Shown: positions 16,560 through 47,317, counted from the first letter of the stretch. The stretch: DNA of 64,000 bases from Haliotis rufescens (GCF_023055435.1 NW_025963779.1:14384001-14448000); one strand, 5' to 3'. Translations and numbers: made by a program. The notes: generated from the sequence alone by a model not told the origin.

Positions 16560-16952
16560 TGGTGTGAGGTGAGGTGAGGTGAGGTGAGGTGAGGTGAGGT
16601 GATGCGAGCGGGGAAGCGAGGCGAGGCGAGGTGAGGAGAGGTGAAATGGGGTTTAACGTCGCGTCCAAGATTATTACACTTATAAAGCGACGTGCAATCA
16701 CGGACTGATGACGATTAATACTGCTAGCCCAAGGAGGTAACATCCTGCAGTTTAACACCAGTACCCCACTCAGACACAGTATACTGACTCCAAGTTGACC
16801 AGTCCTTGTTTTAGCCCCTTAATGTCCAGCGCGAGACAGGGTAAGAACAAGTACCATATTTTAACGTCTTCTTGTATGACGCGGTCGGGTATCGAATTCC
16901 GAAACGTCAGCTCTCCTGGCGAACGCTCTACCGCTAGACCACGGAGGCGGTT
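16560..16952 (-). mobile_element. SINE family C with (GTGAG)n tail next to an N gap (paralogous, partly deleted copies at about 21715-21904, 28768-28930, 36900-37059, 39062-39321, 44445-44758)
   Basis: Head CGCTCTACCGCTAGACCACGGAGGCGG, body TTTTAACGTCTTCTTGTATGACGCGG, tail GGGGTTTAACGTCGCG. Confidence 0.85.
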
Positions 16953-17089
16953 GCCATGGATGTGAAGATTCATGCATGTGATTAAGCCAAAACATTCGTT
17001 ATTCTTCATCAGCAATACAAACCCTAGCTATATGTACGACTAAATCATGCTCTATTCAAATATGAGGACGCTTTTTTTATGACATGTCA

Positions 17090-17212
17090 AATACAGGGAA
17101 CACTTCCTGGTTGATAGAAATGCGTTCTTTTCAGTTTACACATAACACAGGGAGCATTTAAGCTGGGCATACAACTGCAACGAGGAGGGGTGTCACGACG
17201 TAGAGGTAAGTA
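17090..17212 (+). promoter_or_regulatory. Putative 5' non-coding exon with splice donor upstream of A2 (copies: donor GT at 22192, 29217, 37385, 39575, 45084)
   Basis: Consensus donor (G/C)AG|GTAAGT conserved in six copies. Upstream TTTTCAGTTT could be an initiator or an acceptor; ACTTCCTGG is ETS-like. Each GPCR CDS has an acceptor 15-18 nt before its ATG that needs a donor. Confidence 0.6.
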
Positions 17213-17264
17213 CGGTTCTAGAAAACGACATCTTGCATCCATTGCATCTGAAACAATATTATAT

Positions 17265-17433
17265 TGAGTGAGTTCGCTTTTAAAAGTGTTCCCGTTATAT
17301 CGCGGCGTGTCAGCTTAATGTGGAAGGAAAGCCCGAAGTGATGCAGGTCTCAGACATTTAACACTTCGGTGAAACCCACGAGCACGGGTATGGTGCTGAC
17401 AAACCTCGAAATATAATCGGGGCGAACCGGGAT
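17265..17433 (-). mobile_element. Truncated family B SINE at a duplication junction (also 22250-22398, 29275-29427, 39633-39812)
   Basis: Matches the 3' part of the complete copy at 45142-45418 and breaks off at the junctions. Confidence 0.85.
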
Positions 17434-17830
17434 CTAGCTGTATGACGGCGGTATGCAAGTAATCGAAGCTGGACCACACAATCCAGTAATTGAGATTATG
17501 AGCATCGATCTACGCAGTAGGGATACGATGACATGCATCAACCATGTCAGCGAGCCTGACAACCAGAACCCGTTAGTCGCCTTTTACGACAAACATAGTC
17601 GCCTTTTACGGCAAGCATATGTTGCTGAAGACCTATTCTACCCGTGATTTTTTAACATGGGTTCACATATGCGTTATTATATGCTGATCTCAATTGGTCA
17701 TACTTCAGATCTCGTTACAAGTACCAATAGTAAGGGTTCAGAGTATCACATTTGAGGCATATGAAAAACGAAATGTGTCACTACAAACAATCATATTTGC
17801 GTATTATTTCAGGTGATCACCAAATCCAAT

Positions 17831-19138
17831 ATGGCCTCAAGGTCGCCAGTCACCTTCTCAGATACGACCCATTTCGGTGTAGACAACACGACAGCGGAAG
17901 TGACGTCATCATTAAACATCAGCGATGAGGAGAAGAACCGTTATCTATCCCACCTTGACGACTCGATGTTTCCCTTGAGGATACCAGCCGTAGTATATCT
18001 TGGCATCCTAATGGTTCTGGGTATTTTCGGAAATATTCTTGTGTTGATCGTGTACCTCAAGAAATTCAAACCAAGCCCGACCCGTGTGTTTGTGGTGTGT
18101 CTGGCTGTGTTTGACCTCATGACATGCGTCATTTCAATTCCAGGTGAAATCTTGGACATGAGGTACAGTCACACGTTCGACTACCCAGTCGTGTGTAGAA
18201 TGATACGATTCAACAACACATTCTCCGTGGTGTCCTCAGGATTCACGCTCATAGCTGTTGCTATAGACAGATACAGGAAGATATGTCGGCCTTTGAACAA
18301 ACAGATCACCATCAGAGTCGCGCGCATGATGGTAGGGATCGCTGTGTCCGTATCACTAGTTCTCACCATCCCGACAGTTATAGTCAACGGTAGGAAAACG
18401 GTCAAAACAGACAAAGAGGAAATAACAGGCTTCGAGTGTTCCTTTGACGACGGGTGGCGCGGTACTCTGTTCCCCGTGGTCTATATAGGAGTCCTATTCC
18501 TCATCTTCTTCGGTTCTCTGAGTGTCCTGGTGGTTGTGTACATCCTCATTGGAAGGACTGTGTTTAATCACCGGAAATTTAAATTCCGCCCGGCAAAGGA
18601 TAAGGAACGCCACTCTTCAAATTACACAACCGAGACGTCATTTAAAGATGGAACTGAGAATGGGATCGCATTCCGTAACATATCGTCACCCACGGCTCCT
18701 TGCAATGTTTCCAATTCAAACAATGGGACGCTTGGTTTTGACGGTTCGTCTGAGACAAGTTGTACATGTATGAATGACACCTCAGCACAACCCAAGACGC
18801 GTAAAGAAGACAATTCCTCGAATAGTGTGAGATCCATAAGAAAAAATGCTGCAAAACCAAAAGAAAAATCAAGGCCCAGAGCGTTCAAGACAACGCTTAT
18901 GTTGTTCATCATCACAGTGGTGTTCATCATCAGTTTCTTACCTCATCTGATCCTGATGATAACTCGATTTATCAAATCCGACTTTCTGGACTCTTTACAA
19001 GGAGCAGGGTTCATGGTGTATAATGTATTCCTACGCTCATACGTCATACAGAGTGCAGTTAACTGCATTGTGTACAGTTTCTGCAATGAAAGATTCAGAA
19101 ATGAGTGGAGGAAACTACTCGTTTCTTGTTGTCGTTGA
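17831..19138 (+). CDS. Class A GPCR, copy A2, 435 aa
   Basis: Intact ORF with about 22 aa differences from A1; DRY motif. The true ATG is 17831; the ORF-track GTG at 17813 directly follows the acceptor TTTCAG. Confidence 0.95.
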   Translation: MASRSPVTFSDTTHFGVDNTTAEVTSSLNISDEEKNRYLSHLDDSMFPLRIPAVVYLGILMVLGIFGNILVLIVYLKKFKPSPTRVFVVCLAVFDLMTCVISIPGEILDMRYSHTFDYPVVCRMIRFNNTFSVVSSGFTLIAVAIDRYRKICRPLNKQITIRVARMMVGIAVSVSLVLTIPTVIVNGRKTVKTDKEEITGFECSFDDGWRGTLFPVVYIGVLFLIFFGSLSVLVVVYILIGRTVFNHRKFKFRPAKDKERHSSNYTTETSFKDGTENGIAFRNISSPTAPCNVSNSNNGTLGFDGSSETSCTCMNDTSAQPKTRKEDNSSNSVRSIRKNAAKPKEKSRPRAFKTTLMLFIITVVFIISFLPHLILMITRFIKSDFLDSLQGAGFMVYNVFLRSYVIQSAVNCIVYSFCNERFRNEWRKLLVSCCR

Positions 19139-20848: not shown

Positions 20849-22398
20849 TACGTGTATTCAAAAGCATGCTAATTTCTATTAAGGTCGTCATGCCAAGAAA
20901 CAAAATGTTGATTATACATGTATATTCTTACCCATAAGCAGTGTATGGACTAAACGTCCAATCTTATAACAATTTTTTAAAACTCGTGATATATGTATTA
21001 GTCTAAGTTGCTTGGCTAAAACATAAAAGGTGTCGACTGTATTTTATCCTGCAATGAAGTAACAGTTTGAGTTCCACATAATGGACTGACGTTATGGCGC
21101 TGTTCAAATTACCTCCCCATGATCTAACGTATCCTTGGTAACATTGTTCTTTCATGACCGTCAAAGAAGATGGCGCCATAATATACTTTAACTATGTATA
21201 TAGTTCAGGGCAAATCTATACTTTTTTACACCACACATGGGGAAGAGCAAACTATATTTCTAAACTAGATAGTTGGTATTGACAGTAGGTTTATACATAT
21301 CACGAACGTTTAGAACATGCAGATATATTAACAGTTTCCGTGATCCTTTAAATATAACTCAATGTAATATATTATTTTACATATTGCGGTAAGCTGTCAT
21401 CTGATATGCTGACTCCAAGTGTATGATAAACATGTTCATATTTGAGAGTTTTCCCGTCGAAACGAGTTGTTATGTCATGAATTTGGATGCAATCTGGAAA
21501 AGGTGGGGCATGGATCTTCTTCTACCTTTGCATAATGCAAATACTTGTTCTGGTTCATAACATGAAATCNNNNNNNNNNNNNNNNNNNNNNNNNNNNNNN
21601 NNNNNNNNNNNNNNNNNNNNNNNNNNNNNNNNNNNNNNNNNNNNNNNNNNNNNNNNNNNNNNNNNNNNNNNNNNNNNNNNNNNNNNNNNNNNNNNNNNNN
21701 NNNNNNNNNNNNNNAGGCGAGGCGATGCGATGCGATGCGAGGCGTTGCGAAAGGGCGTTTAACGTCGCGTCCAAGATTATTACACTTATAAATCGTTGTG
21801 CAATAAAGGACTGATGACGATTAATACTGCTAGCCCACGGAGATAACCTGCCGCAGTTTAACGGGAACACCCACTCAGACACAGTATACTGACTCCAAGT
21901 TGACGGATGTGAAGATTCATGCATGTGATTTAGCCATAACACTCGTTATTCTTCATCAGCAATACAAACCCTAGCTATATGTACGACTGTACGATATTGT
22001 GGTTAAATACACAAATCATGCTCTATTCAAATATGATGACGCTTCTTTTGATGACATGTCAAATACAGGGAACACTTCCTGGTTGATAGAAATGTGTTCT
22101 TTTCAGTTTACACTGGAAAATATCAACATAACCCAGGGAGCATTTAAGCTGGGCATACAACTGCAACGAGAAGGAGTGTCACGACGTACAGGTAAGTACG
22201 GTTCTAGAAAACGACATCTTGCGTCCATTGCATCTGAAACAATATTGTAGTGAGTGAGTGAGTGAGTGAGTTGGGTTTAACGCCGCTTTTAACAGTATTC
22301 CAGTTATATCACGGCGTGTCAGCTTAATGTGGGAGGAAAGCCCGAAGTGATGCAGGTCTCTGACATTTACCACTATGGTGAAACCCACGAGCACGGGT

Positions 22399-22740: not shown

Positions 22741-22752
22741 TATGTGTTACAA

Positions 22753-22981
22753 CCGTAAAAGGCGACTATGTTTGTCGTAAAAGGCGTTCTGGTGGCCAGC
22801 CTCGCTGACTTGGTTGATGCCTGTCATCGTATCCCAAATATGTGGATCGATGCTCATGATGTCAATCACTGGATTATCTGGTCCAGACTCGATTATTTAC
22901 AGACCGCCGTCATATAGCTGGAATATTGCTGAGTGCGGGGTTAAACAAACTAACAAACAAACAAACAAACAAACAAACAAA
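22753..22981 (+). mobile_element. Family A SINE (paralogue 29696-29924)
   Basis: CGTAAAAGGCGACTATGTTTGTCGTAAAAGGCG ... GCTGGAATATTGCTGAGTGCGGGGTTAAAC(AAAC)n. Confidence 0.85.
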
Positions 22982-25007
22982 CATGTGAGTTGGTGTTAAA
23001 TGGCTCACATCAACACGACTCACACTATCACTGGTGAGTCTTGGTAGATTACTGTTATACGCTTTTGTTACAATACAAAGTTAAGATATATTCCTTTATT
23101 AGATAATTTGCAACCGTGTGGTTTTACCAACGTCCGAATCATGCCGGAAAATAACTTTCCATATATTACGAGCGTTTTGTTACGCACATACACATGTTGA
23201 TATAATAGTTGGTCAGATTACATTTATTCATTTTTCCTGGAGGAAGTATTAGGTATCAATAAATAAACCAACTCATTTATGTCGTGGTAGCCCTGAATAT
23301 TATTATCAGATTATTCTGAAACTTTTTAGATGCTATTAATATTCTTACTTCACAGCATGGCTGCGCACGAGCCAAGTTAGACGCTCAAATGAATCGATGA
23401 CAGGTCCCAACATATACGATTAAAACACCCATATGTAAAATTTAGCTTCGGTTACTTTGATTGATTTGTATGTTTGATAATGTCCCGGAGTTTTAGGGTG
23501 GTAATCGCACGCGTGTATAACATTGAAGCAAAATAGTGCGTGCTTAAGACATGTTCACGTACATGAAAATATATAACGCCAAATGACAGAATAATCAGTT
23601 TCGAATATCTGCCGAAGTAGTTTTAGTTGGATGTAAAATGCAAAATAGTGATGGACATGGATGGATATGAATGGATAACTGAAAATCAGTAAAGACATGT
23701 ATCATTAACCCAGACTTCGGATACCTGCAGAGTTTGTTTGTTTGTTTTGTTTCTTTGTTTGTTGTTTTACGCCGCACCCAGCAATATTCCAGCTATATGA
23801 CGGCGGTCTGTAAATAATCAAGTCTGGACCAGACAATCCAGTGTCCTGCAAAGTAAAGCCAGACACTGAGCTCCAATACGTTCTCTCGTATTAACAGTTT
23901 TGAGCTCCAGGTATCTGCATAGTAAAATATACTCAAACTAAACATATACAGAAAGAAAAGAAGCGGAATGATGCAACATTCATGAGAAACAAAATTATTC
24001 TTTCTTATTTTATTCATTTAATTTTTGGAACTATTATATGAAGTAAAGTTTTAAACCGCAGCGGGTTGAAAAAGTCTTGTCAAAGACAACGTTTTCGATT
24101 GATTTACCTTGTGGGATAAAGTTATGTACAAAGCATTGCGTCTTGGTGTGATTCGAGCTGATGGCTTCGTCTAAGGTTATGAAAATATATCGTGCCTTGA
24201 TCAAACAAATTATTGATCGAATGTAATAAAGGTATACACATTAGGGGGCGTTTACTTATGACACATTGTTGCCATAGTGACCACAATATTTCTAGTATAG
24301 TTGATCGACCTATACCTTCCTGGAATTATTTGATTATTAGAATCCCAAAACGACGTGATCGTGTCAGAAGAAATGTAGCTTTAGTAATATATATGTTTGG
24401 TAATCCAAGGGCACTATTTTATAGACATGTATATGCCTCAGATGATTCCCAGATATTATGCATTCCTTATTGTACATTTTCCTTCCTTAGAAAGGGTGAA
24501 CAGAGGAAGAAATAATTAAGAGTTGTATTATATTGCGTGTCATGTTGTTTCCCCGAGGATATTACTTGTGCTTCATATGTTTTTGGTAGTGTGTTGTTTG
24601 ACACCGCACTCGGTAATAATCCAGCTATATGACGGCGGTATGTAAGTAATCGAAGCTGGACCACACAATCCAGTAATTGAGATTATGAGCATCGATCTGC
24701 CCAGTTGGGATACGATGACATGCATCAACCATGTCAGCGAGCCTGACAACCAGAACCCGTAAGTCGCCTTTTACGACAAACATAGTCGCCTTTACATCAA
24801 GCTTATGTTGCTGAAGACCTATTCTACCCGTGATCTTCACATGGGTTCACATATGCGTTAGTATATGCTTCTCTCAGTTGGTCATACTTCAGATCTCGTA
24901 CCAATAGTAAAGGCTTAGAGTATCACATTTGAGGCATATGAAAAACGAAATATGTCACTACAAACAATCATATTTGCGTATTATTTCAGGTGATCACCAA
25001 ATCCAAT

Positions 25008-26288
25008 ATGGCCTCAAGTTCGCCAGTAATCTTCTCGGATACGACACATTTCGACAGCGACACGACAGCGGAGGTGACGTCATCATTAAACATCAGCGAT
25101 GAGGAGAAGAACCGTTATCTATCCCACCTTGACGACTCGATGTTTCCCTTGATGATACCAGCCGTAGTATATCTTGCCATCCTAATGGTTCTGGGTTTTT
25201 TCGGAAATATTCTTGTGTTGATCGTGTACCTCAAGAAATTCAAACCAAGCCCGACACGTGTGTTTGTGGTGTGTCTGGCTGTGTTTGACCTCATGACATG
25301 CGTCATTTCAATCCCAGGGGAGATCCTGGGCATGAGGTACAGTCACACGTTCGACTACCCAGTCGTGTGTAAAATGATACGATTCAACAACACATTCTCC
25401 GTGGTGTCCTCAGGATTCACGCTCATAGCTGTTGCTATAGACAGATACAGGAAGATATGTCGGCCTTTGAACAAACAGATCACCATCCGAGTCGCGCGCA
25501 TCATGGTAGGGATCGCTGTGTCTGTATCACTAGTCCTCACCATCCCGACAGTTATAGTCTACGGTAGGAAAACGGTCAAAACAGACAAAGAGGAAATAAC
25601 AGGCTTCGAGTGTTCCTTTGACGACGGGTGGCGCGATACTCTGTTCCCCGTGGTCTATATAGGAGTCCTATTCCTCATCTTTTTCGGTTCTCTGAGTGTC
25701 CTGGTGGTTATGTACATCCTCATTGGCAGGACTGTGTTTAATCACCGGAGATTTAAATTCCGTCCGGCAAAGGATAAGAAACATCACTCTTCGAATTACA
25801 AAACCGAGACGTCAGTTAAAGATGGAACTGAGAATGGGATCGCATTCCGTAACATATCGTCACCCACAGCTACTTGCAATGTTTCCAATTCAAACAATGG
25901 GACGCTTGGTTGTACATGTCTGAATGACACCTCAGCACAACCCAAGACGCGTAAAGAAGACAAATCCTCGAATAGTGTGAGATCCATAAGAAATAATGCT
26001 GCAAAACCAAAAGAAAAATCAAGGCCCAGAGCATTGAAAACAACGCTTATGCTGTTCATCATCACAGCGGTGTTCATTATCAGTTTCTTACCTCATCTGA
26101 TCCTGATGATAACTCGATTTATCAAATCCGACTTTCTGGACTCTTTACAAGGAGCAGGATTCATGTTGGATAATGTATTCGTACGCTCATACTTCATACA
26201 GAGTGCAGTTAACTGCATTGTGTATAGTTTCTGCAATGAAAGATTCAGAAATGAGTGGAGGAAACTACTCGTTTCTTGTTATCGTTGA
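25008..26288 (+). CDS. Class A GPCR, copy A3, 426 aa
   Basis: Intact ORF; 24-bp in-frame ICL3 deletion and 3-bp N-terminal deletion relative to A1/A2; acceptor at 24989. Confidence 0.95.
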   Translation: MASSSPVIFSDTTHFDSDTTAEVTSSLNISDEEKNRYLSHLDDSMFPLMIPAVVYLAILMVLGFFGNILVLIVYLKKFKPSPTRVFVVCLAVFDLMTCVISIPGEILGMRYSHTFDYPVVCKMIRFNNTFSVVSSGFTLIAVAIDRYRKICRPLNKQITIRVARIMVGIAVSVSLVLTIPTVIVYGRKTVKTDKEEITGFECSFDDGWRDTLFPVVYIGVLFLIFFGSLSVLVVMYILIGRTVFNHRRFKFRPAKDKKHHSSNYKTETSVKDGTENGIAFRNISSPTATCNVSNSNNGTLGCTCLNDTSAQPKTRKEDKSSNSVRSIRNNAAKPKEKSRPRALKTTLMLFIITAVFIISFLPHLILMITRFIKSDFLDSLQGAGFMLDNVFVRSYFIQSAVNCIVYSFCNERFRNEWRKLLVSCYR

Positions 26289-27845: not shown

Positions 27846-30800
27846 TACGTGTATTCAAAAGCATGCTAATTTCTATTAAGGTCGTCATGCCAAGAAACAA
27901 AATTTTGATTATACATGTATATTCTTACCCACAAGCAGTGTATGGACTAAACGTCCAATCTTATAACAATTTTTTAAAACTCGTTATATATGTATTAGTC
28001 TAAGTTGCTTGGCTAAAACATAAAAGGTGTCGACTGTATTTTATCCTGCAATGAAGTAACAGTTTGAGTTCCACATAATGGACTGACGTTATGGCGCTGT
28101 TCAAATTACCTCCCCAAGATCTAACGTATCCTTGGTAACATTGTTCTTTCATGACCGTGAAAGAAGATGGCGCTATAATATACTTTAACTATGTATATAG
28201 TTCAGGGCAAATCTATACTTTTTTACACCACACATGGGGAAGAGCAAACTATATTTCTAAACTAGATAGTTGGTATTGACAGTAGGTTTATACATATCAC
28301 GAACGTTTAGAACATGCAGATATATTAACAGTTTCCGTGATCCTTTAAATATAACTAAATGTAATATATTATTTTACATATTGCGGTAAGCTGTCATCTG
28401 ATATGCTGACTCCAAGTGTATGATAAACATGTTCATATTTGAGAGTTTTTCCGTCGAAACGAGTTGTTATGTCATGAATTTGGATGCAATCCGGAAAGGG
28501 TGGGGCATGGAACTTCTTCTACCTTTGCATAATGCAAATACTTGTTCTGGTTCATAACATGAAATCNNNNNNNNNNNNNNNNNNNNNNNNNNNNNNNNNN
28601 NNNNNNNNNNNNNNNNNNNNNNNNNNNNNNNNNNNNNNNNNNNNNNNNNNNNNNNNNNNNNNNNNNNNNNNNNNNNNNNNNNNNNNNNNNNNNNNNNNNN
28701 NNNNNNNNNNNNNNNNNNNNNNNNNNNNNNNNNNNNNNNNNNNNNNNNNNNNNNNNNNNNNNNNNNAGGCGTTGCGAAAGGGCGTTTAACGTCGCGTCCA
28801 AGATTATTACACTTATAAATCGTTGTGCAATAAAGGACTGATGACGATTAATACTGCTAGCCCACGGAGATAACCTGCCGCAGTTTAACGGGAACACCCA
28901 ATCAGACACAGTATACTGACTAAGTTGACGGATGTGAAGATTCATGCATGTGATTTAGCCATAACACTCGTTATTCTTCATCAGCAATACAAACCCTAGC
29001 TATATGTACGACTGTACGATATTGTGGTTAAATACACAAATCATGCTCTATTCAAATATGATGACGCTTCTTTTGATAACATGTCAAATACAGGGAACAC
29101 TTCCTGGTTGATAGAAATGTGTTCTTTTCAGTTTACACTGGAAAATATCAACATAACACAGGGAGCATTTAAGCTGGGCATACAACTGCAACGAGAAGGA
29201 GTGTCACGACGTACAGGTAAGTACGGTTCTAGAAAACGACATCTTGCGTCCATTGCATCTGAAACAATATTGTAGTGAGTGAGTGAGTGAGTGAGTGAGT
29301 TGGGTTTAACGCCGCTTTTAACAGTATTCCAGTTATATCACGGCGTGTCAGCTTAATGTGGGAGGAAAGCCCGAAGTGATGCAGGTCTCTGACATTTACC
29401 ACTATGGTGAAACCCACGAGCACGGGTTACGTCAACGTCAATACACACCGCAGGCCAATAACTGGCCAACGCGTTACAAGCCGATAGGGCAGATACTGAG
29501 ATACAACGCAACCTTCTGGCCTTGTGTGACATGACAATGAACAGTTTCCAATGCCTCAACATGTGACTATCCAGCTCCAAAAGTTCATATTTGTATCTAT
29601 GTTATGAAATTTTATATATGGACTTTATTACGTACGATTAATTTACTAAAAATCTATCTGTGCGTTTCTTTTGTTACAGAGTGTATGTGTTACAACCGTA
29701 AAAGGCGACTATGTTTGTCGTAAAAGGCGTTCTGGTGGCCAGTCTCGCTGACTTGGTTGATGCCTGTCATCGTATCCCAAATATGTGGATCGATGCTCAT
29801 GATGTCAATCACTGGACTATCTGGTCCAGACTCGATTATTTACAGACCGCCGTCATATAGCTGGAATATTGCTGAGTGCGGGGTTAAACAAACTAACAAA
29901 CAAACAAACAAACAAACAAACAAACATGTGAGTTGGTGTTAAATGGCTCACATCAACACGACTCACACTATCACTGGTGAGTCTTGGTAGATTACTGTTA
30001 TACGCTTTTGTTACAATACAAAGTTAAGATATATTCCTTTATTAGATAATTTGCAACCGTGTGGTTTTACCAACGTCCGAATCATGCCGGAAAATAACTT
30101 TCCATATATGACGAGCGTTTTGTTACGCACATACACATGTTGATATAATAGTTGGTCAGATTACATTTATTCATTTTTCCTGGAGGAAGTATTAAGTATC
30201 AATAAATAAACCAACTCATTTATGTCGTGGTAGCCCTGAATATTATTATCAGATTATTCTGAAACCTTTTAGATGCTATTAATATTCTTACTTCACAGCA
30301 TGGCTGCGCACGAGCCAAGTTAGACGCTCAAATGAATCGATGACAGGTCCCAACATATGCGATTAAAACACCCATATGTAAAATTTAGCTTCGGTTACTT
30401 TGATTGATTTGTATGTTTGATAATGTCCCGGAGTTTTAGGGTGGTAATCGCACGCGTGTATAACATTGAAGCAAAAAAGTGCATGCTTAAGACATGTTCA
30501 CGTACATGAAAATATATAACGCCAAATGACAGAATAATCAGTTTCGAATATCTGCCGAAGTAGTTTTAGTTGGATGTAAAATGCAAAATAGTGATGGACA
30601 TGGATGGATATGAATGGATAACTGAAAATCAGTAAAGACATGTATCATTAACCCAGACTTCGGATACCTGCAGAGTTTGTTTGTTTGTTTTGTTTCTTTG
30701 TTAGTTGCTTTACGCCGCACTCAGCAATATTCCAGCTATATGACGGCGGTCTGTAAATAATGGAGTCTGGACCAGACAATCCAGTGTCCTGCAAAGTAAA

Positions 30801-36463: not shown

Positions 36464-37442
36464 CTCTAATATCGGACCGTTATTGTGACGGTGTCTACTA
36501 GAAACGTTTTGGAGATCTTTGCATCCCCTACCCCTCCTCACAGAAACATTGGATGTTAGGCTACTTAAATATACCAACACTGACAGCAAACTAGATTTCA
36601 CTCCCTACATGCGATCGATTTGACCAGAAGCATGGATGTGATGTGATNNNNNNNNNNNNNNNNNNNNNNNNNNNNNNNNNNNNNNNNNNNNNNNNNNNNN
36701 NNNNNNNNNNNNNNNNNNNNNNNNNNNNNNNNNNNNNNNNNNNNNNNNNNNNNNNNNNNNNNNNNNNNNNNNNNNNNNNNNNNNNNNNNNNNNNNNNNNN
36801 NNNNNNNNNNNNNNNNNNNNNNNNNNNNNNNNNNNNNNNNNNNNNNNNNNNNNNNNNNNNNNNNNNNNNNNNNNNNNNNNNNNNNNNNNNNNNNNNNNNG
36901 CGAGGCGAGGTGAGGAGGGGTGAAATCGGGTTTAACGTCGCGTCCAAGATTATTACACTTAAAAAGTGTCGTGCAGTCACGGACTGATGACGATTAATAC
37001 TGCTAGCCCACGGAGATAACATGCCGCAGTTAAACACAGTATACTGACTCCAAGTTGACGGATGTGAAGATTCATGCATGTGATTTAGCCGTTAATAACA
37101 CTCGTTATTCTTCATCAGCAATACAAACTCTAGCTATATGTACGACTCAGCATGCTTGAAACCCAGCTGAACCACGTTAAATACAGATATTTGGGTTAAA
37201 TACACAAATCTTATTCTATTCCAATATGATGACGCATCTTTTTATGACATGTCAAATACAGGGAACACTTCCTGGTTGATAGAAATGCGTTCTTTTCAGT
37301 TTACACTGGAAAATATCAACATAACACAGGGAGCATTTAAGCTGGGCATACAACTGCAAGGAGAAGGAGTGTCACGACGTAGAGGTAAGTACGGTTCTAG
37401 AAAACGACATCTTGCGTCCATTGCATCTGAAACAATATTGTA

Positions 37443-37719
37443 GTGAGTGAGTTCGGTTTAAAGCCGCTTTTAAAAGCGTTCAAGTTATATCGCGGCGTGT
37501 CAGCTTAATGTGGGAGGAAAGCCCGAAGTGATGCAGGTCTCAGACGATGACGACTTCGGTGAAACTCACGAGCACGGGTATGGTGCTAACAAACCTAGAA
37601 ACATAATCGTGGCGAACCAGTATTCGAACCCACAATCATAGGTTTCTGGCGAGCCCAAGGGACGCAGCTCTGCGTCAGCGAATTGCGGCGCCTTAGACGA
37701 CTGGGCCAACCGTACCCCC
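37443..37719 (-). mobile_element. Family B SINE, complete (duplicate of 45142-45418)
   Basis: TSD GAAACAATATTGTA / GAAACAATGTTATA. Confidence 0.9.
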
Positions 37720-40208
37720 GAAACAATGTTATAAATATTTGTCTAATCATAATTGAATAGATTTGGACGAATCATATAAATAGTTTCTTGTATTACAAAA
37801 TTCGAAAGGATAAAATGAAATGTCTGTTAAAACATGTAATACTGTTTTGGCAACAATGACTACTGTCAAATCATGACTAGTGAATGTAGTGATTAACTTA
37901 AAACATCAAAAACAACAAGCATTTTCCTTACCAATCCTCAAAGTGTAGATGAAGACAGCAAATGGATTGATTATGTTATTTAAATTAAGTGACATATATA
38001 ATTAATGATTAGTATATTTAAAAAGCTTGTACAGTATGCAGTTGTTTTGATATCGCTTCCTTTTGATATTGAGTGCGTGGTGTAACCGCATTCTAGTTAC
38101 ATCAAGGCGTATCATCTTAGCCAACTCTTCAGTGGGAGGAAAGGCGGAATTACCATTACCCACCAGCTGTCATGGCGAATCTAGAGGAAAAAGCACAGTC
38201 ACTATCATAAATTAAAAAAAATTAAAAGTCGTCGACTGTATTTTATCCTGCAATGAAGTAACAGTTTGAGTTCCACATTATGAAATGACGTTATGGCGCT
38301 GTTTAAATTACCTCCCCATGATCTAACTTTTCCTTGGTAACATCGTTCTTTCATGACCGTCAAGGAAGATGGCGCTATAATATACTTTAACTATAATAGT
38401 TGAGGGCAGATCTATACTTTATACACCACACATGGGGAAGAGCAAACTATATTTCTTAACTAGATAGTTGGTATTGACAGTAGGTTTATATATAACACCA
38501 ACGTTTAGAGCATGCAGATATATTAACAGTTTGCGTGATCCTTTAAAATATAACTAAATGTAATATATTATTTTACATATTGCGGTAAGCTGTCATCTGA
38601 TTTGCTGACTCCAAGTGTATGATATACATGTTCATATTTGAGATGTTTCCTGTTGAAACGTATTGTAATGTCATGAATTTGGATGCAGTCTGGAAAAGGT
38701 GGGGCATGGGTCTTCTCTTCTACCTTTGCATAATGTAAATACTTGTTCTGGTTCATAACATGAAATCGTGTGGTCGATGTAGAGTGACCATTTTATAATT
38801 ACAAGATTAAACTCTAGATACAATATATCATGTCTAATTTCATCGATGTACAATGTATGTACATGGTTTTCCCTAGGCTCTAATATCGGACCGTTATTGG
38901 GACTGTGTCTACTAGAAACGTTTTGGAGATCTTTGCATCCCCTCCCCCTCCTCACAGAAACATTGGATGTTAGGCTACTTAAATATACCAACACTGACAG
39001 CAAACTAGATTTCACTCCCTACATTCACCTCCCTCGATTTGACCAGAAGCCATGGATGTGATGTGATGTAATGTGATGTGATGTGATGTGATGTGAGCCA
39101 CGGAGATAACATCCCGCAGTTTAACACCAATACCCCACTCAGACACAGTATACTGACTCCAAGTTGACAAGTCCTTGTTTTAGCCCCTTAATGCCCAGCG
39201 CCAGACAGGGTAACAACAAGTACCATATTTTAACGTCTTCTTGTATGACGCGGCCGGGGATCGAATTCCGAACCTTCCGCTCTTCTGGCGGACGCTCTAC
39301 CGCTAAACCACGGATGCGGTCGCCATGGATGTGAAGATTCATGCATGTGATTAAGCCAACACACTCGTATTCTTCATCAGCAATACAAACCCTGGCTATA
39401 TGTACGACTAAATCATGCTCTATTCAAATATGAGGACGCTTTTTTTTAACACATGTCAAGTACAGGGAACACTTCCTGGTTGATAGAAATTCGTTCTTTT
39501 CAGTTTACACATAACACAGGGAGCATTTAAGCTGGGCATACAACTGCAACGAGAAGGATTGTCACGACGTACAGGTAAGTACGGTTCTAGAAAACGACAT
39601 CTTGCATCCATTGCATCTGAAACAATATTATAGTGAGTGAGTTCGGTTTAAAGCCGCTTTTAACAGTTCTCCAGTTATATCGCGGCGTGTCAGCTTAATG
39701 TAGGAGGAAAGCCCGAAGTGATGCAGGTCTCAGACATTTACCACTTCGGTGAAACCCACAAGCACGGGTATGGTGCTGACAAACCTAGAAACATAATCGT
39801 GGCGAACCGGGATCCAGCTGTATGACGGCGGTATGTAAGTAATCGAAGCTGGACCACACAATCCAGTAATTGAGATTATGAGCATCGATCTACCCAGTTG
39901 GGATACGATGACATGCATCAACCATGTCAGCGAGCCTGACAACCAGAACCCGTTAGTCGCCTTTTACGACAAACATAGTCGCCTTTTACGGCAATCTTAT
40001 GTTGCTGAAGACCTATTCTACCCGTCATCTTCACATGGGTTCTCATATGCGTTAGTATATGCTGATCTCAGTTAGTCATACTTCAGATCTCGTTACAAGT
40101 ACCAATATTACGGGTTCAGAGTATCACATTTGACGCATATGAAAAACGAAATATGTCACTACAAACAATCATATTTGCGTATCATTTCAGGTGATCACCA
40201 AATCCAAT

Positions 40209-41516
40209 ATGGCCTCAAGTTCGCCGGTCATCTTCTCGGATACGACACATTTCGGTGTAGACAACACGACAGCGGAAGTGACGTCATCATTAAACATCAG
40301 CGATGAGGAGAAGAACCGTTATCTATCCCACCTTGACGACTCGATGTTTCCCTTGATGATACCAGCCGTGATATATCTGGCCATCCTAATGGTTCTGGGT
40401 ATTTTCGGAAATATTCTTGTGCTGATCGTGTACATCAAGAAATTCAAACCAAGCCCGACCCGTGTGTTTGTTGTGTGTCTGGCTGTGTTTGACCTCATGA
40501 CATGCGTCATTTCAATTCCAGGGGAGATCCTGAGCATGAGGTACAGTCATACGTTCGACTACCCAACCGTGTGTAAAATGATACGATTCAACAGCACATT
40601 CTCCGTGGTGTCCTCAGGATTGACGCTCATAGCTGTTGCTATAGACAGATACAGGAAGATCTGTCGGCCTTTGAACAAACAGATCACCATCAGAGTCGCG
40701 CGCATCATGGTAGGGATCGCTGTGTCCGTATCACTAGTCCTCACCATCCCGACAGTTATAGTCTACGGTAGGAAAACGGTTGAAACAGACAAAGAGGAAA
40801 TAACAGGCTTCGAGTGTTCCTTTGACGACGGGTGGCGCGGTACTCTGTTCCCCGTGGTCTATATAGGAGTCCTATTTCTCATGTTCGTCGGTTCTCTGAG
40901 TGTCCTGGTGGTTATGTACATCCTCATTGGCAGGACTGTGTTTAAACACCGGAGATTTAAATTCCGCCCGGCAAAGGATAAGAAACATCACTCTTCGAAT
41001 TACACAACCGAGACGTCATTTAAAGATGGAACTGAGAATGTGATCGCCTTCAGTAACATATCGTCACCCACAGCTCCTTGCAATGTTTCCAATTCAGACA
41101 ATGGGACGCTTGGTCTTGACGGTTCGTCTGAGACAGGTTGTACATGTCTGAATGATACCTCAGCACAACCAAAGACGCGTAAAGAAGATAAATCCTCGAA
41201 TAGTGTGAGATCAATAAGAAATAATGCTGCAAAACCAAACGAGAAATCAAGGCCCAGAGCGTTGAAAACAACGCTTATGTTGTTCATCATCACAGCGGTG
41301 TTCATCATCAGTTTCTTACCTCATCTGATCCTGTTGATAACTCGATTTATCAAATCCGACTTTCTGGACTCTTTACAAGGAGCAGGATTCATGTTGTATA
41401 ATGTATTCCTACGCTCATTCTTCATACAGAGTGCAGTTAACTGCATTGTGTACAGTTTATGCAATGAAAGATTCAGAAGTGAGTGGAGGAAACTACTCGT
41501 TTCTTGTTATCGTTGA
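40209..41516 (+). CDS. Class A GPCR, copy A5, 435 aa
   Basis: Intact ORF with DRY and NCIVY; acceptor at 40190. Confidence 0.95.
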   Translation: MASSSPVIFSDTTHFGVDNTTAEVTSSLNISDEEKNRYLSHLDDSMFPLMIPAVIYLAILMVLGIFGNILVLIVYIKKFKPSPTRVFVVCLAVFDLMTCVISIPGEILSMRYSHTFDYPTVCKMIRFNSTFSVVSSGLTLIAVAIDRYRKICRPLNKQITIRVARIMVGIAVSVSLVLTIPTVIVYGRKTVETDKEEITGFECSFDDGWRGTLFPVVYIGVLFLMFVGSLSVLVVMYILIGRTVFKHRRFKFRPAKDKKHHSSNYTTETSFKDGTENVIAFSNISSPTAPCNVSNSDNGTLGLDGSSETGCTCLNDTSAQPKTRKEDKSSNSVRSIRNNAAKPNEKSRPRALKTTLMLFIITAVFIISFLPHLILLITRFIKSDFLDSLQGAGFMLYNVFLRSFFIQSAVNCIVYSLCNERFRSEWRKLLVSCYR

Positions 41517-42991
41517 GGGAAAGCAGCTGATATGTAAGACACGAGAGGAAACTTTGGAACATAAATAGAACACTTTGTCATGTGATGGACGCACAACAAA
41601 CATGTTCAATCATCGGTTAAATGTTTTGCTGTTCATTCCATGCGTTACGGAACGATGACACTTGGATGAATAAATCGTAACAATTTGTTGATAATCACAA
41701 CTTGACGGATGGCTGCCGCTATACAACGATCAATGAAGAGAGACGTGACTAATTGTGACGTTATACATGTATGATATATGTAACACCGTCAAGAAGGAAC
41801 AAGGACACGACTTCAGAACCTGCAAAGTTGTCTTCCCTGGACCACCTGAGACTGAGAGATTGTCTGTACTAGATGGGACCACGACAGTTACTTCTATGCC
41901 TTGCCCATAAAGCCCTATGCTATCTATTTAATTTATCTGTTATCACCTGCTACATCCGCAGTTGACATATTAATGACTTTTAAGGCATGCAGCGGCCTGA
42001 TATAATCTTCAGTAATCTCGACTACCAACATGTGCAGTGATGCTACATGTATCTCTATATTATACATATATCTCTATATTATACATACATATATATATAT
42101 TACCCTTGGTGCACTTCGTTACATATATCACATGTAAAATAAGCATTGCTGAAACACATGGACTACTAGTAACCAACTGTTCTTCATATGCTGATATTAA
42201 CACATGTTGCAGTGGGATCGAAACGATGACTGGAAGGATAGGCTGTTTAGATGTATGTATGTGGAAGACAGCACGGATTGTAAAATTGTACCACTAGTTT
42301 ACCATTATAACATCGTAACACCAGTTTACCCCGAATCTGATTCTAATAAATGTCATTCATTATCATGCCAACATATCAGATTCAACTCATGTCAGAACTC
42401 AACAGATGTCACTGTATTCCAAACATCACTTTACACATACACGTAGAAAAGGATGTTTTGATATTTAGTATCTCAAATAACATGTTTATCACACCGAGAA
42501 ACCGCAATAAATATTCAAAATCGATATCTTCAGGATCACGAGTAGCACAGCTACAAGTAAATTTGTAAACGTAAGGTCGAGTCTCCCACTCATTGGTCGC
42601 TCGACCTAATGTTTTCCAGTAACGACTCCTCGTAAATGCATTGATCGTATTGATAGTGATGAGATGACTATTTTATGCACGGATAAGTTGTTATGGATAA
42701 GTTGCAAAAGTTTCAGTCGAGTTATATACGTGCATGTCAATATTTTACTGTATTTTGCTGTTAAGGTGATCTAATTCTTGTGATTTTCAAATTGCAACAT
42801 TGTTAGACATACTTATGCTTCACAATGATATCAGGAAATAAATAAAATCTCACTCTCTTGTCTCTTGTTATCACATACGTATAAACCAAGATCTGTCCAT
42901 TAAAATAATACACAGACTCTAAACATTTCTCCTCCATCGACTCTAGTTTCTATATTTGATATCAAAAGCCACCTTAGTGAGATAATATCTG

Positions 42992-44444: not shown

Positions 44445-44620
44445 TGGATGTGATGTGATGTGATGTGATTGTGGATGTGATGTGATGTGATGTGATGTGA
44501 TGTGATGTGATGTGATGTGATGTGATGTGATGTGATGTGATGTGATGTGTGATGCGAAGCGGGGCTAGGCGAGGCGAGGCGAGGCTAGGCGAGGTGAGGT
44601 GAGGTGAGGTGAGGAGAGGT
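44445..44620. repeat. Compound pentanucleotide microsatellite (GATGT)n-(GCGAG)n-(GTGAG)n
   Basis: Directly visible; four of the five N gaps fall on paralogous copies of this tract. Confidence 0.95.
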
Positions 44621-45141
44621 GAAATGGGGTTTAACGTCGCGTCCAAGATTATTACACTTAAAAAGTGTCGTGCAGTCACGGACTGATGACAATTAATACT
44701 GCTAGCCCACGGAGATAACATGCCACAGTTAAACACAGTATACTGACTCCAAGTTGACGGATGTAAAGATTCATGCATGTGATTTAGCCGTTAATAACAC
44801 TCGTTATTCTTCATCAGCAATACAAACTCTAGCTATATGTACGACTCAGCATGCTTGAAACCCAGCTGAACCACGTTAAATACAGATATTGGGGTTAAAT
44901 ACACAAATCTTATTCTATTCCAATATGATGACGCATCTTTTTATGACATGTCAAATACAGGGAACACTTCCTGGTTGATAGAAATGCGTTCTTTTCAGTT
45001 TACACTGGAAAATATCAACATAACACAGGGAGCATTTAAGCTGGGCATACAACTGCAAGGAGAAGGAGTGTCACGACGTAGAGGTAAGTACGGTTCTAGA
45101 AAACGACATCTTGCGTCCATTGCATCTGAAACAATATTGTA

Positions 45142-45418
45142 GTGAGTGAGTTCGGTTTAAAGCCGCTTTTAACAGTGTTCCAGTTATATCGCGGCGTGTC
45201 AGCTTAATGTGGGAGGAAAGCCCGAAGTGATGCAGGTCTCAGACGTTGACGACTTCGGTGAAACCCACGAGCACGGGTATGGTGCTGACAAACCTAGAAA
45301 CATAATCGGGGCGAACCAGTATTCGAACCCACAATCATAGGTTTCTGGCGTGCCCAAGGGACGCAGCTCTGCGTCAGCGAATTGCGGCGCCTTAGACGAC
45401 TGGGCCACCCGTACCCCC
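45142..45418 (-). mobile_element. Family B SINE, complete, in the putative 5'-UTR intron of GPCR B
   Basis: TSD 45128-45141 / 45419-45432; A and B boxes; (GTGA)n tail. Confidence 0.9.
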
Positions 45419-46153
45419 GAAACAATGTTATAAATATTTGTCTAATCATGATTGAGTACATTTGGACGAATCATATAAATAGTTTCTTGTATTACAAAAT
45501 TCGAAAGGATAAAATGAAATGTCTGTTAAAACATGTAATACTGTTTTGGCAACCATGACTACTGTCAAATCATGACTAGTGAATGTAGTGATTAACATAA
45601 AACATCAAAAACAACAAGCAGTTTCCTTACCAATCCTCAAAGTTTAGATGAAGACAGCAAATGGATTGATAATGTTATCTAAATTAAGTGACATTTATTA
45701 TTAATGATTAGTATTATTTAAAAAGCTTGTACAGTATGCAGTTGTTTTGATATCGCTTCCTTTTGATATTGAGTGCGTGGTGCAACCGCATTCTAGTTAC
45801 ATCAAGGCGTATAATCTTAGCCAACTCTTTAGTGGGAGGAAAGGCGGAAGCGATGTAGGATTTAGACATTTTAATTACCATTACCCACCAGCTGTCATGG
45901 CGAATCTAGAGGATAAAACACAGTCACGATCATAAATTAATTACCACCCCTTAGTTAAGGTAAGCAATACTGTACAGAGAATAGCTGTGCCTTTGCAACC
46001 ACCCCCCCCACTTAAACTATGTGCTAGCTTTCTACGTGTAGACACAAAGTAAAGTATGACACATAAATATTGTGTTAAATAGTTGTAGGTATTTATTCCG
46101 TCTTTTGTTGCATTACTATAGACACTTTTCATATTCAGAATACCGACTCCACG

Positions 46154-47317
46154 ATGGAACAAGACGAGAACAACACCATATACCTACATCAATATGACGA
46201 CATGTACGCTTTGAAATACCTACCAGCCATAGTGTTTGTAGCTATTTTGATGTTGGTTGGTGTCGTTGGCAACTCACTGGTCTGTTACGTGTATCTGTGC
46301 AAGTTCAAACCAAGCACAACAAGGTGTTTCATTGTAACACTAGCACTTCTGGACATTCTGAACTGTTCTCTAAGCATGCCCTTGAAGATCGTACACATGA
46401 GACATCATGCCACGTCCGGGTTGTATGGCTGCAGGTTTGCCACGATTAGTCTCACATTCTTTTCGTTGGCATCCGCAGCAGTTCTTTTACCAGTCGCTGT
46501 TGACAGATATTTGAAAATCTGCAAACCATTCGCCAGCCAGATGACAATCTTCTACGCAAAGGTAGGATGTGCGGTGGCGTGTACTGTGGCTTTACTTCTA
46601 ACCATACCCCCTGCCATTATCCATGGCCCTACCATTCATCCACTGCCTCACGCAAACGCCACATTTTGCTACCTTTCTGACGGAGAAAGAGGAACTCTTC
46701 CCCACGTGATATACTCTGGTGTTCAGATGCTGTTATTTGTAATGACTGCAGGGGCTCTCATTGTCATGTACACATGTATATGGCATAGGGTGTACAAACA
46801 GAAGAAAGCCTTTCGTCAAAGGGCAAGAGCAGGCTCTTCTAACACGATGAGTCCAAACCGTAATTGTACACAAGAATCTACTAGTGAAACGGTTACTTCT
46901 AGCCCAAATGAAACTTCAATGATATCCCAAGAAGGCAATCAGAGCCTTGACCCCCAAAAGGATTCCAGCAGCTTGAAGACGGAACATGAACAGTGTGCAT
47001 TCACGAGCCCTTCAAGGAGTGGACCAATACATGACAAGGGAGTTACTACAACCCTTCACCAGGAATATGTAGTAAGGAGGATGACCCTAATGTTATTCCT
47101 CATAAGTCTCATGTTTTTCGTTAGCTTCCTGCCCTACCTCATTATTACGGTGACTGTGTCAAGTAATAAGAGCTTTGCAGAAAGACTGACTGTTATTTCA
47201 AGTGCAAGTGTCATCATATTCGAAAGATCCTACTTTATCCAGAGTGCATGCAACCCCTTTATATACAGCTTTTGTAGTGTGAATTTCCGCCGTGAGATGA
47301 TGAAAGTGTGTCGATGA
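46154..47317 (+). CDS. Class A GPCR, divergent paralogue B, 387 aa
   Basis: 7TM; GN, LALLD, DRY, SFLPY, RSYFIQSACNPFIY. Shares family motifs with type A (KFKPS.TR.F, RY.KIC.P, TLMLF.I, RSYFIQSA.N..YSFC). Acceptor TTTTCATATTCAG at 46138. Confidence 0.95.
   Translation: MEQDENNTIYLHQYDDMYALKYLPAIVFVAILMLVGVVGNSLVCYVYLCKFKPSTTRCFIVTLALLDILNCSLSMPLKIVHMRHHATSGLYGCRFATISLTFFSLASAAVLLPVAVDRYLKICKPFASQMTIFYAKVGCAVACTVALLLTIPPAIIHGPTIHPLPHANATFCYLSDGERGTLPHVIYSGVQMLLFVMTAGALIVMYTCIWHRVYKQKKAFRQRARAGSSNTMSPNRNCTQESTSETVTSSPNETSMISQEGNQSLDPQKDSSSLKTEHEQCAFTSPSRSGPIHDKGVTTTLHQEYVVRRMTLMLFLISLMFFVSFLPYLIITVTVSSNKSFAERLTVISSASVIIFERSYFIQSACNPFIYSFCSVNFRREMMKVCR

What the first reader, a model, noticed from the sequence alone, without database searches (positions are those of the whole stretch)
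16950..46160. Promoter/5'-exon capture: duplicated type-A receptors sit behind the 5' exon of the neighbouring divergent gene B
Seen: a block ending in a consensus donor (AG|GTAAGT) occurs six times (GT at 17206, 22192, 29217, 37385, 39575, 45084). It precedes A2-A5 and B but not A1. Just after the donor is a family B SINE. That SINE is complete with its 14-bp TSD only where the sequence runs on into B's intron (45142-45418 and its duplicate at 37443). It is broken at a junction before A2, A3, A4 and A5. Every CDS has an acceptor 15-18 nt before its ATG. Inference: the block belongs ancestrally to B, and the duplication breakpoints fell in the 5'-UTR introns of A and B. This would create chimeric genes (B 5' exon + A coding exon), so four new receptor variants could inherit B's expression while A1 keeps its own. 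It is a simple route to rewiring receptor expression during family expansion.
Basis: partly seen in the sequence, partly recalled or inferred. Interest (0 to 1): 0.85.

Follow-up and report, generated by a model that had tools for sequence, protein, structure and literature searches.

The report
Abalone receptor copies behind neighbour's exon
In the red abalone genome, four of five near-identical receptor genes lack the family's own upstream exon and sit behind copies of a short non-coding block from the neighbouring receptor gene, a known way of making hybrid genes, but no RNA evidence yet shows the hybrid transcripts.

Summary
The window (Haliotis rufescens, chromosome contig C1) holds five intact single-coding-exon class-A GPCR genes (A1-A5, 90-95% identical) and a 36%-identical neighbour, B.

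- **The block.** A locus-specific block ending in AG|GTAAGT occurs six times. It lies before A2-A5 and B, and once as an orphan. The genome has only one other copy.
- **Direction of the event.** A young 277-nt SINE lies 58 nt after the donor. It is full length with a duplicated target site only in the B and orphan copies, and is cut off before A2-A5. So the block-to-B arrangement came first.
- **A1 is different.** A RefSeq model of A1 splices a different, single-copy upstream exon (ending at 9029) onto the conserved acceptor 18 nt before the ATG. The A2-A5 units do not contain that exon.
- **Signs of function.** A2-A5 are under purifying selection. A core around the donor is about three times less variable than its flanks.
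- **What is missing.** No RNA evidence for block-to-A or block-to-B splicing could be obtained. The block could also be an internal exon rather than a promoter-bearing first exon.
- **Novelty.** The mechanism (tandem duplication with breakpoints in two neighbouring genes' 5' introns) is already known from Drosophila, so this is a well-resolved new example, not a new kind.

The N runs lie between units and never between a block and its gene.

The parts
8949..9029 (+). A1's own upstream exon (the part read as coding in RefSeq model XP_046375940.2); donor TTG|GTAAGT at 9030
   Evidence: The 27-aa N-terminal extension of P0049 maps exactly here. It is single copy in the genome and has no homology to the block.
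12217..13542 (+). A1 coding exon: acceptor ...ttttttttcag|GCGATC at 12216/12217, ATG at 12235, stop at 13542
   Evidence: The RefSeq model reads AITKSN across this acceptor.
16958..17205 (+). Block copy before A2 (candidate exon 17135-17205; donor GT at 17206)
17263..17428 (+). Truncated family-B SINE before A2. The junction at 17428|17432 leads into the interior of a second SINE that is part of the A 5' intron (A1-equivalent 11861).
17813..19138 (+). A2 coding exon (acceptor before 17813, ATG at 17831)
21905..22191 (+). Block copy before A3 (candidate exon 22107-22191; donor GT at 22192)
22249..22398 (+). Truncated family-B SINE before A3. The junction at 22398|22399 leads into the 5' end of another dispersed repeat of about 350 nt. 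That repeat is followed by an inverted copy of A1-upstream 10895-10123 and a direct copy of 10884-11252.
24990..26288 (+). A3 coding exon (ATG at 25008)
28930..29216 (+). Block copy before A4 (candidate exon 29132-29216; donor GT at 29217); SINE truncated at 29427
32307..33608 (+). A4 coding exon (ATG at 32325)
36902..38149 (+). Orphan duplicate of B's upstream region: block (donor GT at 37385), complete SINE about 37443-37719 with target-site duplication, and about 430 nt of B-type intron. It ends 290 nt short of a B acceptor and has no B coding exon.
   Evidence: 97.5% identical to 44601-45849
39327..39574 (+). Block copy before A5 (candidate exon 39504-39574; donor GT at 39575); SINE truncated at 39808|39812
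   Evidence: Other SINE copies in the reads run on past 39813 with the SINE consensus (table 7).
40191..42919 (+). A5 coding exon (ATG at 40209, stop at 41516) and a 3' UTR of about 1.4 kb. RNA-like contigs cover 40595-42919 and stop at AATAAA 42837 / ATTAAA 42899.
44760..45083 (+). Block before B (candidate exon 44999-45083; donor GT at 45084). The conserved core runs from about 44964 to 45140.
45142..45418 (+). Complete 277-nt family-B SINE in B's 5' intron, with a 12/14 target-site duplication
46139..47317 (+). B coding exon (acceptor ttttcatattcag| before 46139, ATG at 46154)
16377..16559 (.). N run between the A1 flank and the pre-A2 region. The other N runs are at 21570-21714, 28567-28766, 36648-36899 and 43710-43855.
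   Evidence: All are intergenic, with flanks collinear with ungapped paralogs.

Best explanation
**Ancestral arrangement (inferred).** On the + strand: A1-type exon 1, a 3.2-kb 5' intron, the A coding exon, about 3.4 kb of flank, the block (a non-coding exon of B), an intron carrying a SINE, then the B coding exon.

**The event.** One or more tandem segmental duplications had their left end inside A's 5' intron and their right end inside the SINE in B's 5' intron. Each new A coding exon therefore kept its acceptor but lost the A1-type exon 1. It landed directly behind a copy of B's block and of the whole intergenic region that precedes B.

**Later history.** Unequal crossing-over and/or gene conversion multiplied and mixed the units. 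This produced A2-A5 and an orphan block.

**Most likely working.** A2-A5 are transcribed with the block's exon spliced from its GTAAGT donor to the conserved acceptor 18 nt before the ATG. The protein is pure A and the 5' end is B-type.

**Shown versus inferred.** The anatomy, the direction of the event, A1's separate exon model, the intactness and constraint of A2-A5, and the transcription of A5's 3' part are shown. Use of the block donor by A2-A5 and by B, and any change in expression, are inferred.
For: - The six block copies are locus-specific.
- The SINE is full length with a target-site duplication only where it runs on to B or in the orphan copy, and is truncated before A2-A5.
- The A1 RefSeq model uses the shared acceptor with a unique upstream exon at 8949-9029. 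That exon and its surroundings are not in the A2-A5 units. Homology to A1 starts at 11861 for A2/A5 and reaches only to 10123 for A3/A4.
- The acceptor and its polypyrimidine tract are nearly invariant in all five A genes.
- All A ORFs are intact, with dN/dS 0.24-0.49 and dS 0.07-0.10.
- In three RNA-like runs from two studies, contigs lie on A5 from 40595 to the polyA signals near 42900. One is a 731-nt piece with no mismatch. The neighbouring single-copy intergenic bins, which a DNA run covers, are empty in these runs.
- The core from -120 to +56 around the donor has 10 of 177 variable columns. The flanks have 39 of 235 (Fisher p = 6e-4).
- The A3 type has a partner in H. cracherodii that shares its 8-aa deletion, so the array predates that species split and has been kept.
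Against: - No contig or joint links any block to a coding exon. The block bins and the acceptor bin are empty in the RNA-like runs.
- That negative is weak. The first 400 nt of the A5 CDS are also uncovered, and 42 joints were not listed.
- Whether runs X1-X3 are RNA is the tool's guess. It is supported only by the coverage pattern.
- The evidence type behind the RefSeq A1 model is not visible here.
- An acceptor-like gttcttttcag| lies 85 nt (71 nt in A2/A5) before the donor and is conserved in all copies. The block may therefore be an internal exon fed by an upstream promoter.
- The core is also conserved in the orphan and C604 copies, which lack an intact coding exon behind them. Gene conversion rather than selection could explain part of the conservation.
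- Unit order and number cross five N runs.
Confidence: 0.55

Rival explanations
1. Complex locus with a shared internal exon. The block is an 85-nt internal non-coding exon with its own acceptor and donor. Transcription starts further upstream, for example at A1's exon 1 or in the preceding unit, and reads along the same-strand array. The duplications copied an exon but not a promoter, so the copies need not take on B's expression.
For: - A conserved acceptor-like site with a polypyrimidine run and a TTGAT branch-like motif lies 85 nt (71 nt in A2/A5) upstream of the donor in all seven copies.
- The conserved core begins about 30 nt upstream of that site.
- The candidate exon holds no ATG.
- All genes lie on one strand.
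Against: - No RNA support either way.
- RNA-like contigs on A5 stop at polyA signals about 2 kb before the next block, which argues against heavy read-through.
- A single acceptor-like motif within 250 nt is not rare by chance.
Confidence: 0.17
2. The block is not an exon. It is duplicated intergenic DNA that happens to contain a strong donor-like octamer, or a conserved regulatory element. A2-A5 would then be transcribed from other start sites or be only weakly expressed.
For: - The six donors are one ancestral occurrence. About two AGGTAAGT octamers are expected by chance in 128 kb of two-strand sequence.
- No RNA contig lies on any block.
- The Rfam searches and the genome search give no independent functional label.
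Against: - A2-A5 keep a near-invariant acceptor that the A1 model shows to be used, but they lack A1's exon.
- The donor sits inside a core that is three times less variable than its flanks.
- It is the best donor in every interval.
- B also has an acceptor 15 nt before its ATG and needs an upstream exon.
Confidence: 0.22
3. Assembly artefact. The tandem units are mis-scaffolded alleles or collapsed and re-expanded repeats joined across the N runs, so the array and its chimeric junctions are not real.
For: Every unit is bounded by an N run. Sequence beside two of the runs is 98.5% identical between units.
Against: - Each block-to-coding-exon link lies within uninterrupted sequence.
- The units differ by 2-10%, with dS 0.07-0.10, which is more than allelic.
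- The flanks of all N runs are collinear with ungapped paralogs.
- RefSeq lists all five proteins, and an independent H. cracherodii assembly has at least five A copies on one chromosome.
Confidence: 0.04

Closest known systems
[quoted passage not shown] 2017, PMC5460883, read)
   Same: One tandem duplication with breakpoints inside two neighbouring genes puts the 5' part of the downstream gene in front of the 3' part of the upstream gene. The parent genes stay intact at the ends of the array. That paper reports that such chimeras often change expression.
   Different: Here only a non-coding 5' exon is swapped, so the protein is unchanged. The chimera was then amplified to four copies inside a receptor family. 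It is fixed and old enough to be shared in part with a sister species. Expression is untested.
Sdic cluster of Drosophila melanogaster
   Same: A fusion of two adjacent genes made by duplication acquired a new 5' regulatory region and was then tandemly amplified between the two parent genes.
   Different: Sdic has a chimeric coding region and a promoter assembled from former intron or exon sequence. Here the coding exon is untouched.
Loci where an intronless gene shares a 5' non-coding exon with a neighbour, for example the cholinergic VAChT/ChAT locus (own knowledge, not checked here)
   Same: This would match the rival reading, in which same-strand genes with single coding exons are fed by common upstream non-coding exons.
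   Different: No shared transcript has been shown here. A1's modelled exon and the block are unrelated sequences.
Lineage-specific class-A GPCR expansions in Lophotrochozoa (bioRxiv 10.1101/2024.07.14.603414; only title and abstract seen)
   Same: A and B are PF00001 receptors with a single coding exon. They lie in a chromosome region dense with related genes, and the genome has at least 50 relatives.
   Different: That work concerns family dynamics and chemosensory roles. As far as I read it, it does not address 5'-exon exchange between neighbours.

Membership tests
Chimeric gene by tandem duplication across two neighbouring genes (5'-exon capture) | The duplicated segment starts inside the upstream gene and ends inside the downstream gene, both in the same orientation | tested here: met
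   Left ends are at A1-equivalent 11861 (A2/A5) or beyond 10123 (A3/A4), inside the modelled A1 intron 9030-12216. Right ends are at B-SINE positions about 176 and about 137, between the block donor and B's acceptor.
Chimeric gene by tandem duplication across two neighbouring genes (5'-exon capture) | The direction of the event can be determined (which arrangement is parental) | tested here: met
   The SINE is complete with a target-site duplication only in the B-linked and orphan copies, and is truncated at the A junctions.
Chimeric gene by tandem duplication across two neighbouring genes (5'-exon capture) | Both parental genes are retained intact at the ends of the array | tested here: met
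   A1 has its own unique upstream exon. B has the block, the complete SINE, an acceptor and an intact ORF.
Chimeric gene by tandem duplication across two neighbouring genes (5'-exon capture) | A chimeric transcript exists (block exon spliced to the A coding exon) | tested here: inconclusive
   RNA-like contigs cover only 40595-42919 of A5.
Chimeric gene by tandem duplication across two neighbouring genes (5'-exon capture) | The captured piece is an exon or promoter of the donor gene (B uses the block) | not testable with these tools
   B's coding exon lay outside the single 6-kb stretch allowed for reads. B's block bin is empty in X1-X3. There are only indirect signs: the conserved core and the best donor score.
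Rhodopsin-type (class A) GPCR, Pfam PF00001 | Full-length match to 7tm_1 above the gathering score, with an intact ORF | tested here: met
   All six ORFs score 115-119 bits against a cut-off of 30.5, over profile positions 1-260. Source names differ (cholecystokinin-, orexin- and angiotensin-receptor-like), so the ligand is unknown.
SINE insertion with target-site duplication | Dispersed high-copy element with defined ends, flanked by a short direct repeat | tested here: met
   At least 5,492 candidates, with many matches over positions 1-277 at 95-96%. The flanking repeat is 14 nt with 12 of 14 identical.
Spliced-leader RNA gene (considered because the block is a short repeated unit ending in a donor) | Many tandem copies genome-wide, an Sm-site after the donor, and the leader found on many unrelated mRNAs | tested here: not met
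   Only seven copies exist, six in this locus and a partial paralogous copy of it on contig C604. No AATTTTGG-like Sm motif occurs in the 57 nt after the donor. No Rfam match.

The most novel reading that the evidence does not exclude
The same B exon was captured more than once. The evidence is two different SINE breakpoints 39 nt apart with different partners, plus a third breakpoint in the same intron for the orphan copy. The resulting B-fronted A genes have been kept under selection since before the H. rufescens / H. cracherodii split. On this reading, exchange of 5' non-coding exons between neighbouring receptor genes would be a recurrent, selectable route. An expanding mollusc GPCR family would use it to move new copies into a different expression domain while the founder copy keeps its own.
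Probability: 0.25. Interest if true: 0.6.

Novelty: new member of a known kind. Interest (0 to 1): 0.42.

Why it matters
Receptor families that expand by tandem duplication need each new copy to be expressed somewhere useful. This locus gives an unusually readable case:
- A SINE and its target-site duplication fix the direction of the event.
- The founder gene's own exon is known from a gene model.
- The new copies are intact and constrained.

If the hybrid transcripts exist, four receptors with A-type proteins would be driven from B-type 5' sequence. That can be tested directly by comparing tissue expression of A1, A2-A5 and B in abalone. The principle itself is already established in Drosophila, so the value is as a clean example in a mollusc, not as a new mechanism.

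Tried and rejected
- **Sequencing runs and reads.** One run search and one read-laying run gave RNA-like contigs only on the 3' part of A5. No block-to-exon joint was listed. The small depth in bin 39450-39649 of X2 and X3 scales with the huge SINE depth of the next bin, so I treat it as SINE spill-over, not block expression. B's acceptor could not be included because of the 6,000-letter limit.
- **Block as a dispersed repeat.** Rejected: seven copies genome-wide.
- **Block as a known RNA gene.** Rejected: no Rfam hit at gathering score, and only a chance-level mir-6 hit at E = 0.99.
- **Spliced-leader gene.** Rejected (see membership test).
- **A1 using a diverged copy of the block.** Rejected: no similarity between 8200-9400 and any block at word size 7. 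The only hits there are a short flanking repeat outside the exon.
- **Block uORF as a coding sequence.** Rejected: the 14-nt deletion in A2/A5 shifts its frame.
- **Two independent capture events.** This could not be established. A single capture followed by a deletion (A2/A5 type) and by a repeat insertion plus inversion (A3/A4 type) fits equally well.
- **Exact order of duplications.** Not recoverable, because identity is mosaic. A3/A4 are 97-98.6% identical upstream but 93% in the CDS. Orphan and B are 97.5% identical although A5 lies between them.
- I built or searched no joined exon1+exon2 sequence, and I read no letters of the N runs from other copies.
Full report
**What the window is**

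The window is G000:C1:14384001-14448000. Source names attached to its proteins identify the genome as Haliotis rufescens, the red abalone. Six open frames of at least 200 aa lie on the + strand. All six match Pfam 7tm_1 over the whole profile.
- Five of them (A1-A5) have ATGs at 12235, 17831, 25008, 32325 and 40209. They are 90-95% identical in protein.
- The sixth, B (46154-47317), is 36% identical to them.
- The genome holds exactly five A-type copies, all in this window. The next relative is about 80% identical over the first 274 residues (67% over the rest) and lies about 98 kb away on the other strand.
- B is single copy apart from a 99-aa fragment on contig C604.
- Automatic names differ (cholecystokinin-, orexin- and angiotensin-receptor-like). 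I treat both genes as orphan class-A receptors from a large lineage-specific family.

**The N runs, tested first**

The five N runs are at 16377-16559, 21570-21714, 28567-28766, 36648-36899 and 43710-43855.
- Each lies between the 3' flank of one A gene and the region before the next block, beside a GAGGYG/GATGYG minisatellite.
- None lies in a coding frame, so the 'in frame' question does not arise.
- None lies between a block and the coding exon that follows it, so the central observation does not cross any N run.
- For every run, the 400 nt on each side map in the same order and orientation onto paralogous copies that have no N at that place. There is therefore no sign of a misjoin.
- I did not read or infer the missing letters.
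- The number and order of units along the array do depend on the assembly across these runs.
- Against an artefact: the units differ from each other by 2-10%. All five proteins are in RefSeq. An independent assembly of H. cracherodii carries at least five A copies on one chromosome.

**The observation**

*Block and donor*
They are the only AGGTAAGT octamers on either strand of the window.
- They are copies of one ancestral site, so the repetition itself is not independent evidence.
- They sit in a block that aligns in all six copies.
- The block is locus-specific. The whole genome has only one more copy, on C604.
- The C604 copy is part of a partial duplicate with this layout: distal A flank, block, SINE, B intron, the first 285 nt of B, then unrelated rearranged sequence.
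- No block lies in the 12 kb of window or the 20 kb of chromosome upstream of A1.

*SINE*
- The SINE starts 58 nt after the donor. 45142-45418 is a full-length member of a young, abundant family, with at least 5,492 candidates and many matches over positions 1-277 at 95-96%.
- It is flanked by GAAACAATATTGTA and GAAACAATGTTATA, which is 12 of 14 identical. The orphan copy at 37443 has the same flanks.

*Junctions*
- Before A2 and A5 the SINE stops at about position 176. It is joined, with two or three bases of microhomology at most, to the interior of a different SINE that is part of the A 5' intron (A1-equivalent 11861).
- Before A3 and A4 it stops at about position 137. There it meets the first base of another dispersed repeat of about 350 nt, with at least 1,761 candidates.
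- That repeat is followed by an inverted copy of A1-upstream 10895-10123 and a direct copy of 10884-11252.
- The orphan copy (36902-38149, 97.5% identical to 44601-45849) ends at a third breakpoint in the same intron.

*Acceptors*
- Every coding exon has an acceptor 18 nt (A genes) or 15 nt (B) before the ATG.

**What fixes the direction**

A target-site duplication shows that the sequence on both sides of the SINE was continuous when the SINE inserted. Block, 57 nt, SINE, intron and B therefore form the older arrangement. The A-linked copies, in which the same SINE is cut off, are derived from it. The C604 fragment has the same B-linked order.

**A1's own exon**

RefSeq protein XP_046375940.2 is A1 with 33 extra N-terminal residues.
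- The last six extra residues (AITKSN) translate the 18 nt between the acceptor and the ATG.
- The first 27 are encoded at 8949-9029, which ends TTG|GTAAGT.
- The model therefore splices 9029 to 12217. The extension is probably just an open 5' UTR.
- I cannot see what evidence the model rests on.
- This exon region is single copy in the genome. It has no similarity to any block.
- It lies outside everything the A2-A5 units share with A1.
- The acceptor and about 100 nt before it are nearly invariant in all five A genes.
- So A2-A5 keep a splice acceptor that the family uses but lack the family's first exon. The block, with the best donor-like site in each interval between one coding exon and the next acceptor (rank 1 of 250-390 GT sites; approximate matrix from memory), is what stands in its place.
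- Each unit also carries the full A 3' flank and minisatellite that precede the block at B. The captured context is thus B's whole upstream intergenic region, not only a few hundred bases.

**Signs of function**
- All A frames are intact, with dN/dS 0.24-0.49 and dS 0.07-0.10.
- Among the copies of the block, the 177 columns from -120 to +56 around the donor have 10 variable positions. The flanks on both sides have 39 of 235 (Fisher p = 6e-4). This is not explained by CpG content.
- The core divergence (1-4%) is also below the synonymous divergence of the genes.
- The orphan and C604 copies share the conserved core, so gene conversion may contribute.
- In H. cracherodii, XP_071111687 pairs with A3 (96.9% identical, same 8-aa deletion). 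Three near-identical copies group with A1/A2. At least part of the array is therefore older than the species split and has been kept.

**RNA evidence**

The one run search returned runs whose RNA status is a guess. I laid X1-X3 (species label A, two studies) and X17 (another label, DNA-like) on 39250-45249.
- X17 covers all 30 bins.
- X1-X3 cover only 40595-42919 (X2 from 40311). One 731-nt piece is identical to A5.
- That coverage stops at AATAAA 42837 / ATTAAA 42899.
- X1-X3 are empty over single-copy intergenic bins where X17 has normal depth. This pattern fits RNA, and it means A5, a block-fronted copy, is transcribed with a 3' UTR of about 1.4 kb.
- No contig lies on the A5 block, the A5 acceptor or the part of B's block that was in range. 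No block-to-exon joint is among the listed joints.
- Because the first 400 nt of the CDS are also uncovered and most joints were not listed, this is no evidence of absence.
- The key claim, that the donors are used, remains untested.
- I built no joined exon model and searched none.

All copies have a good acceptor-like site, gttcttttcag|, with a TTGAT about 24 nt upstream. It lies 85 nt (71 nt in A2/A5, because of a 14-nt deletion) before the donor.
- The piece between this site and the donor has no ATG.
- The block could therefore be an internal non-coding exon fed from an upstream promoter, rather than a first exon with its own promoter.
- In that case the duplications moved an exon but not necessarily B's regulation.
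- A TATA-like TTTAAG lies about 50 nt before the donor, and TATATG about 245 nt before it, so a start inside the block remains possible.
- I cannot decide between these readings with sequence alone.

**History**

Segment identities are mosaic.
- A2 and A5 units are 93.5% identical throughout.
- A3 and A4 are 97-98.6% identical from the distal flank through the block and upstream region, but 93% in the CDS.
- Orphan and B are 97.5% identical although A5 lies between them.

This points to repeated unequal crossing-over or gene conversion. The two A-junction types could be two captures, or one capture followed by a deletion in one lineage and a repeat insertion with inversion in the other. Neither type can be derived from the other by one simple step.

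**Comparison and verdict**

[quoted passage not shown] 2017, PMC5460883). From my own knowledge, the Sdic cluster of Drosophila is a fusion of neighbours that was then amplified.

This locus fits that kind on every structural criterion I could test. It is untested on the transcript criterion. It is a clear, polarised example in a mollusc receptor family and not a new mechanism.
- The structure is real: 0.9.
- A2-A5 actually use the block exon: about 0.55.
- They thereby take on B's expression: lower.

Interest is moderate.

Noticed in passing
G000:C604:571585-578003 (loci L004, L005, L002): A partial second copy of the B locus sits on a 1.3-Mb unplaced contig. Its layout is distal A flank, block (97% identical to B's), complete SINE, B intron and the first 99 codons of B (94%). 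It then jumps to an inverted copy of window 50517-50997 and to direct copies of 60858-62952. It is either a haplotig-like variant or a degenerate segmental duplicate.
   Followed up: partly
window 22399-22753 and 29428-29782: A dispersed repeat of about 350 nt (at least 1,761 genome candidates at 84-86%) begins exactly at the point where the family-B SINE is cut off before A3 and A4. This suggests a retroelement insertion or a template switch made this junction.
   Followed up: partly
window 10884-11252 vs 23756-24125 and 30699-31068: This piece of A1's 5' intron is 96% identical to its copies before A3 and A4. The neighbouring pieces are only 87-89% identical, and one of them is inverted. Possibly it is a conserved intronic element of the A genes.
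   Followed up: no
window 3473-4007, 6099-8177, 51090-51558, 53315-55168: Four tandem-repeat arrays with periods of about 55, 73, 48 and 68 nt, each 93-98% identical between repeats.
   Followed up: no
window 36307-36378: A tRNA-like match just above the Rfam gathering score (30.1 bits against 29), inside a repeat in the A4 3' flank. It is probably a tRNA-derived SINE head rather than a tRNA gene.
   Followed up: no
H. cracherodii proteins XP_071111780, 790, 800 (P0047, P0045, P0048): Three A-type copies in black abalone are 99-99.8% identical to each other. The array is therefore still duplicating or being homogenised independently in the sister species.
   Followed up: partly
G000:C1:14285445-14286854, 14348895-14349614, 14369769-14370485, 14377876-14378982, 14463018-14464223: The chromosome region around the window is dense with further single-exon class-A GPCR genes (33-80% identical to A). 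The A/B array is therefore part of a much larger receptor cluster.
   Followed up: no
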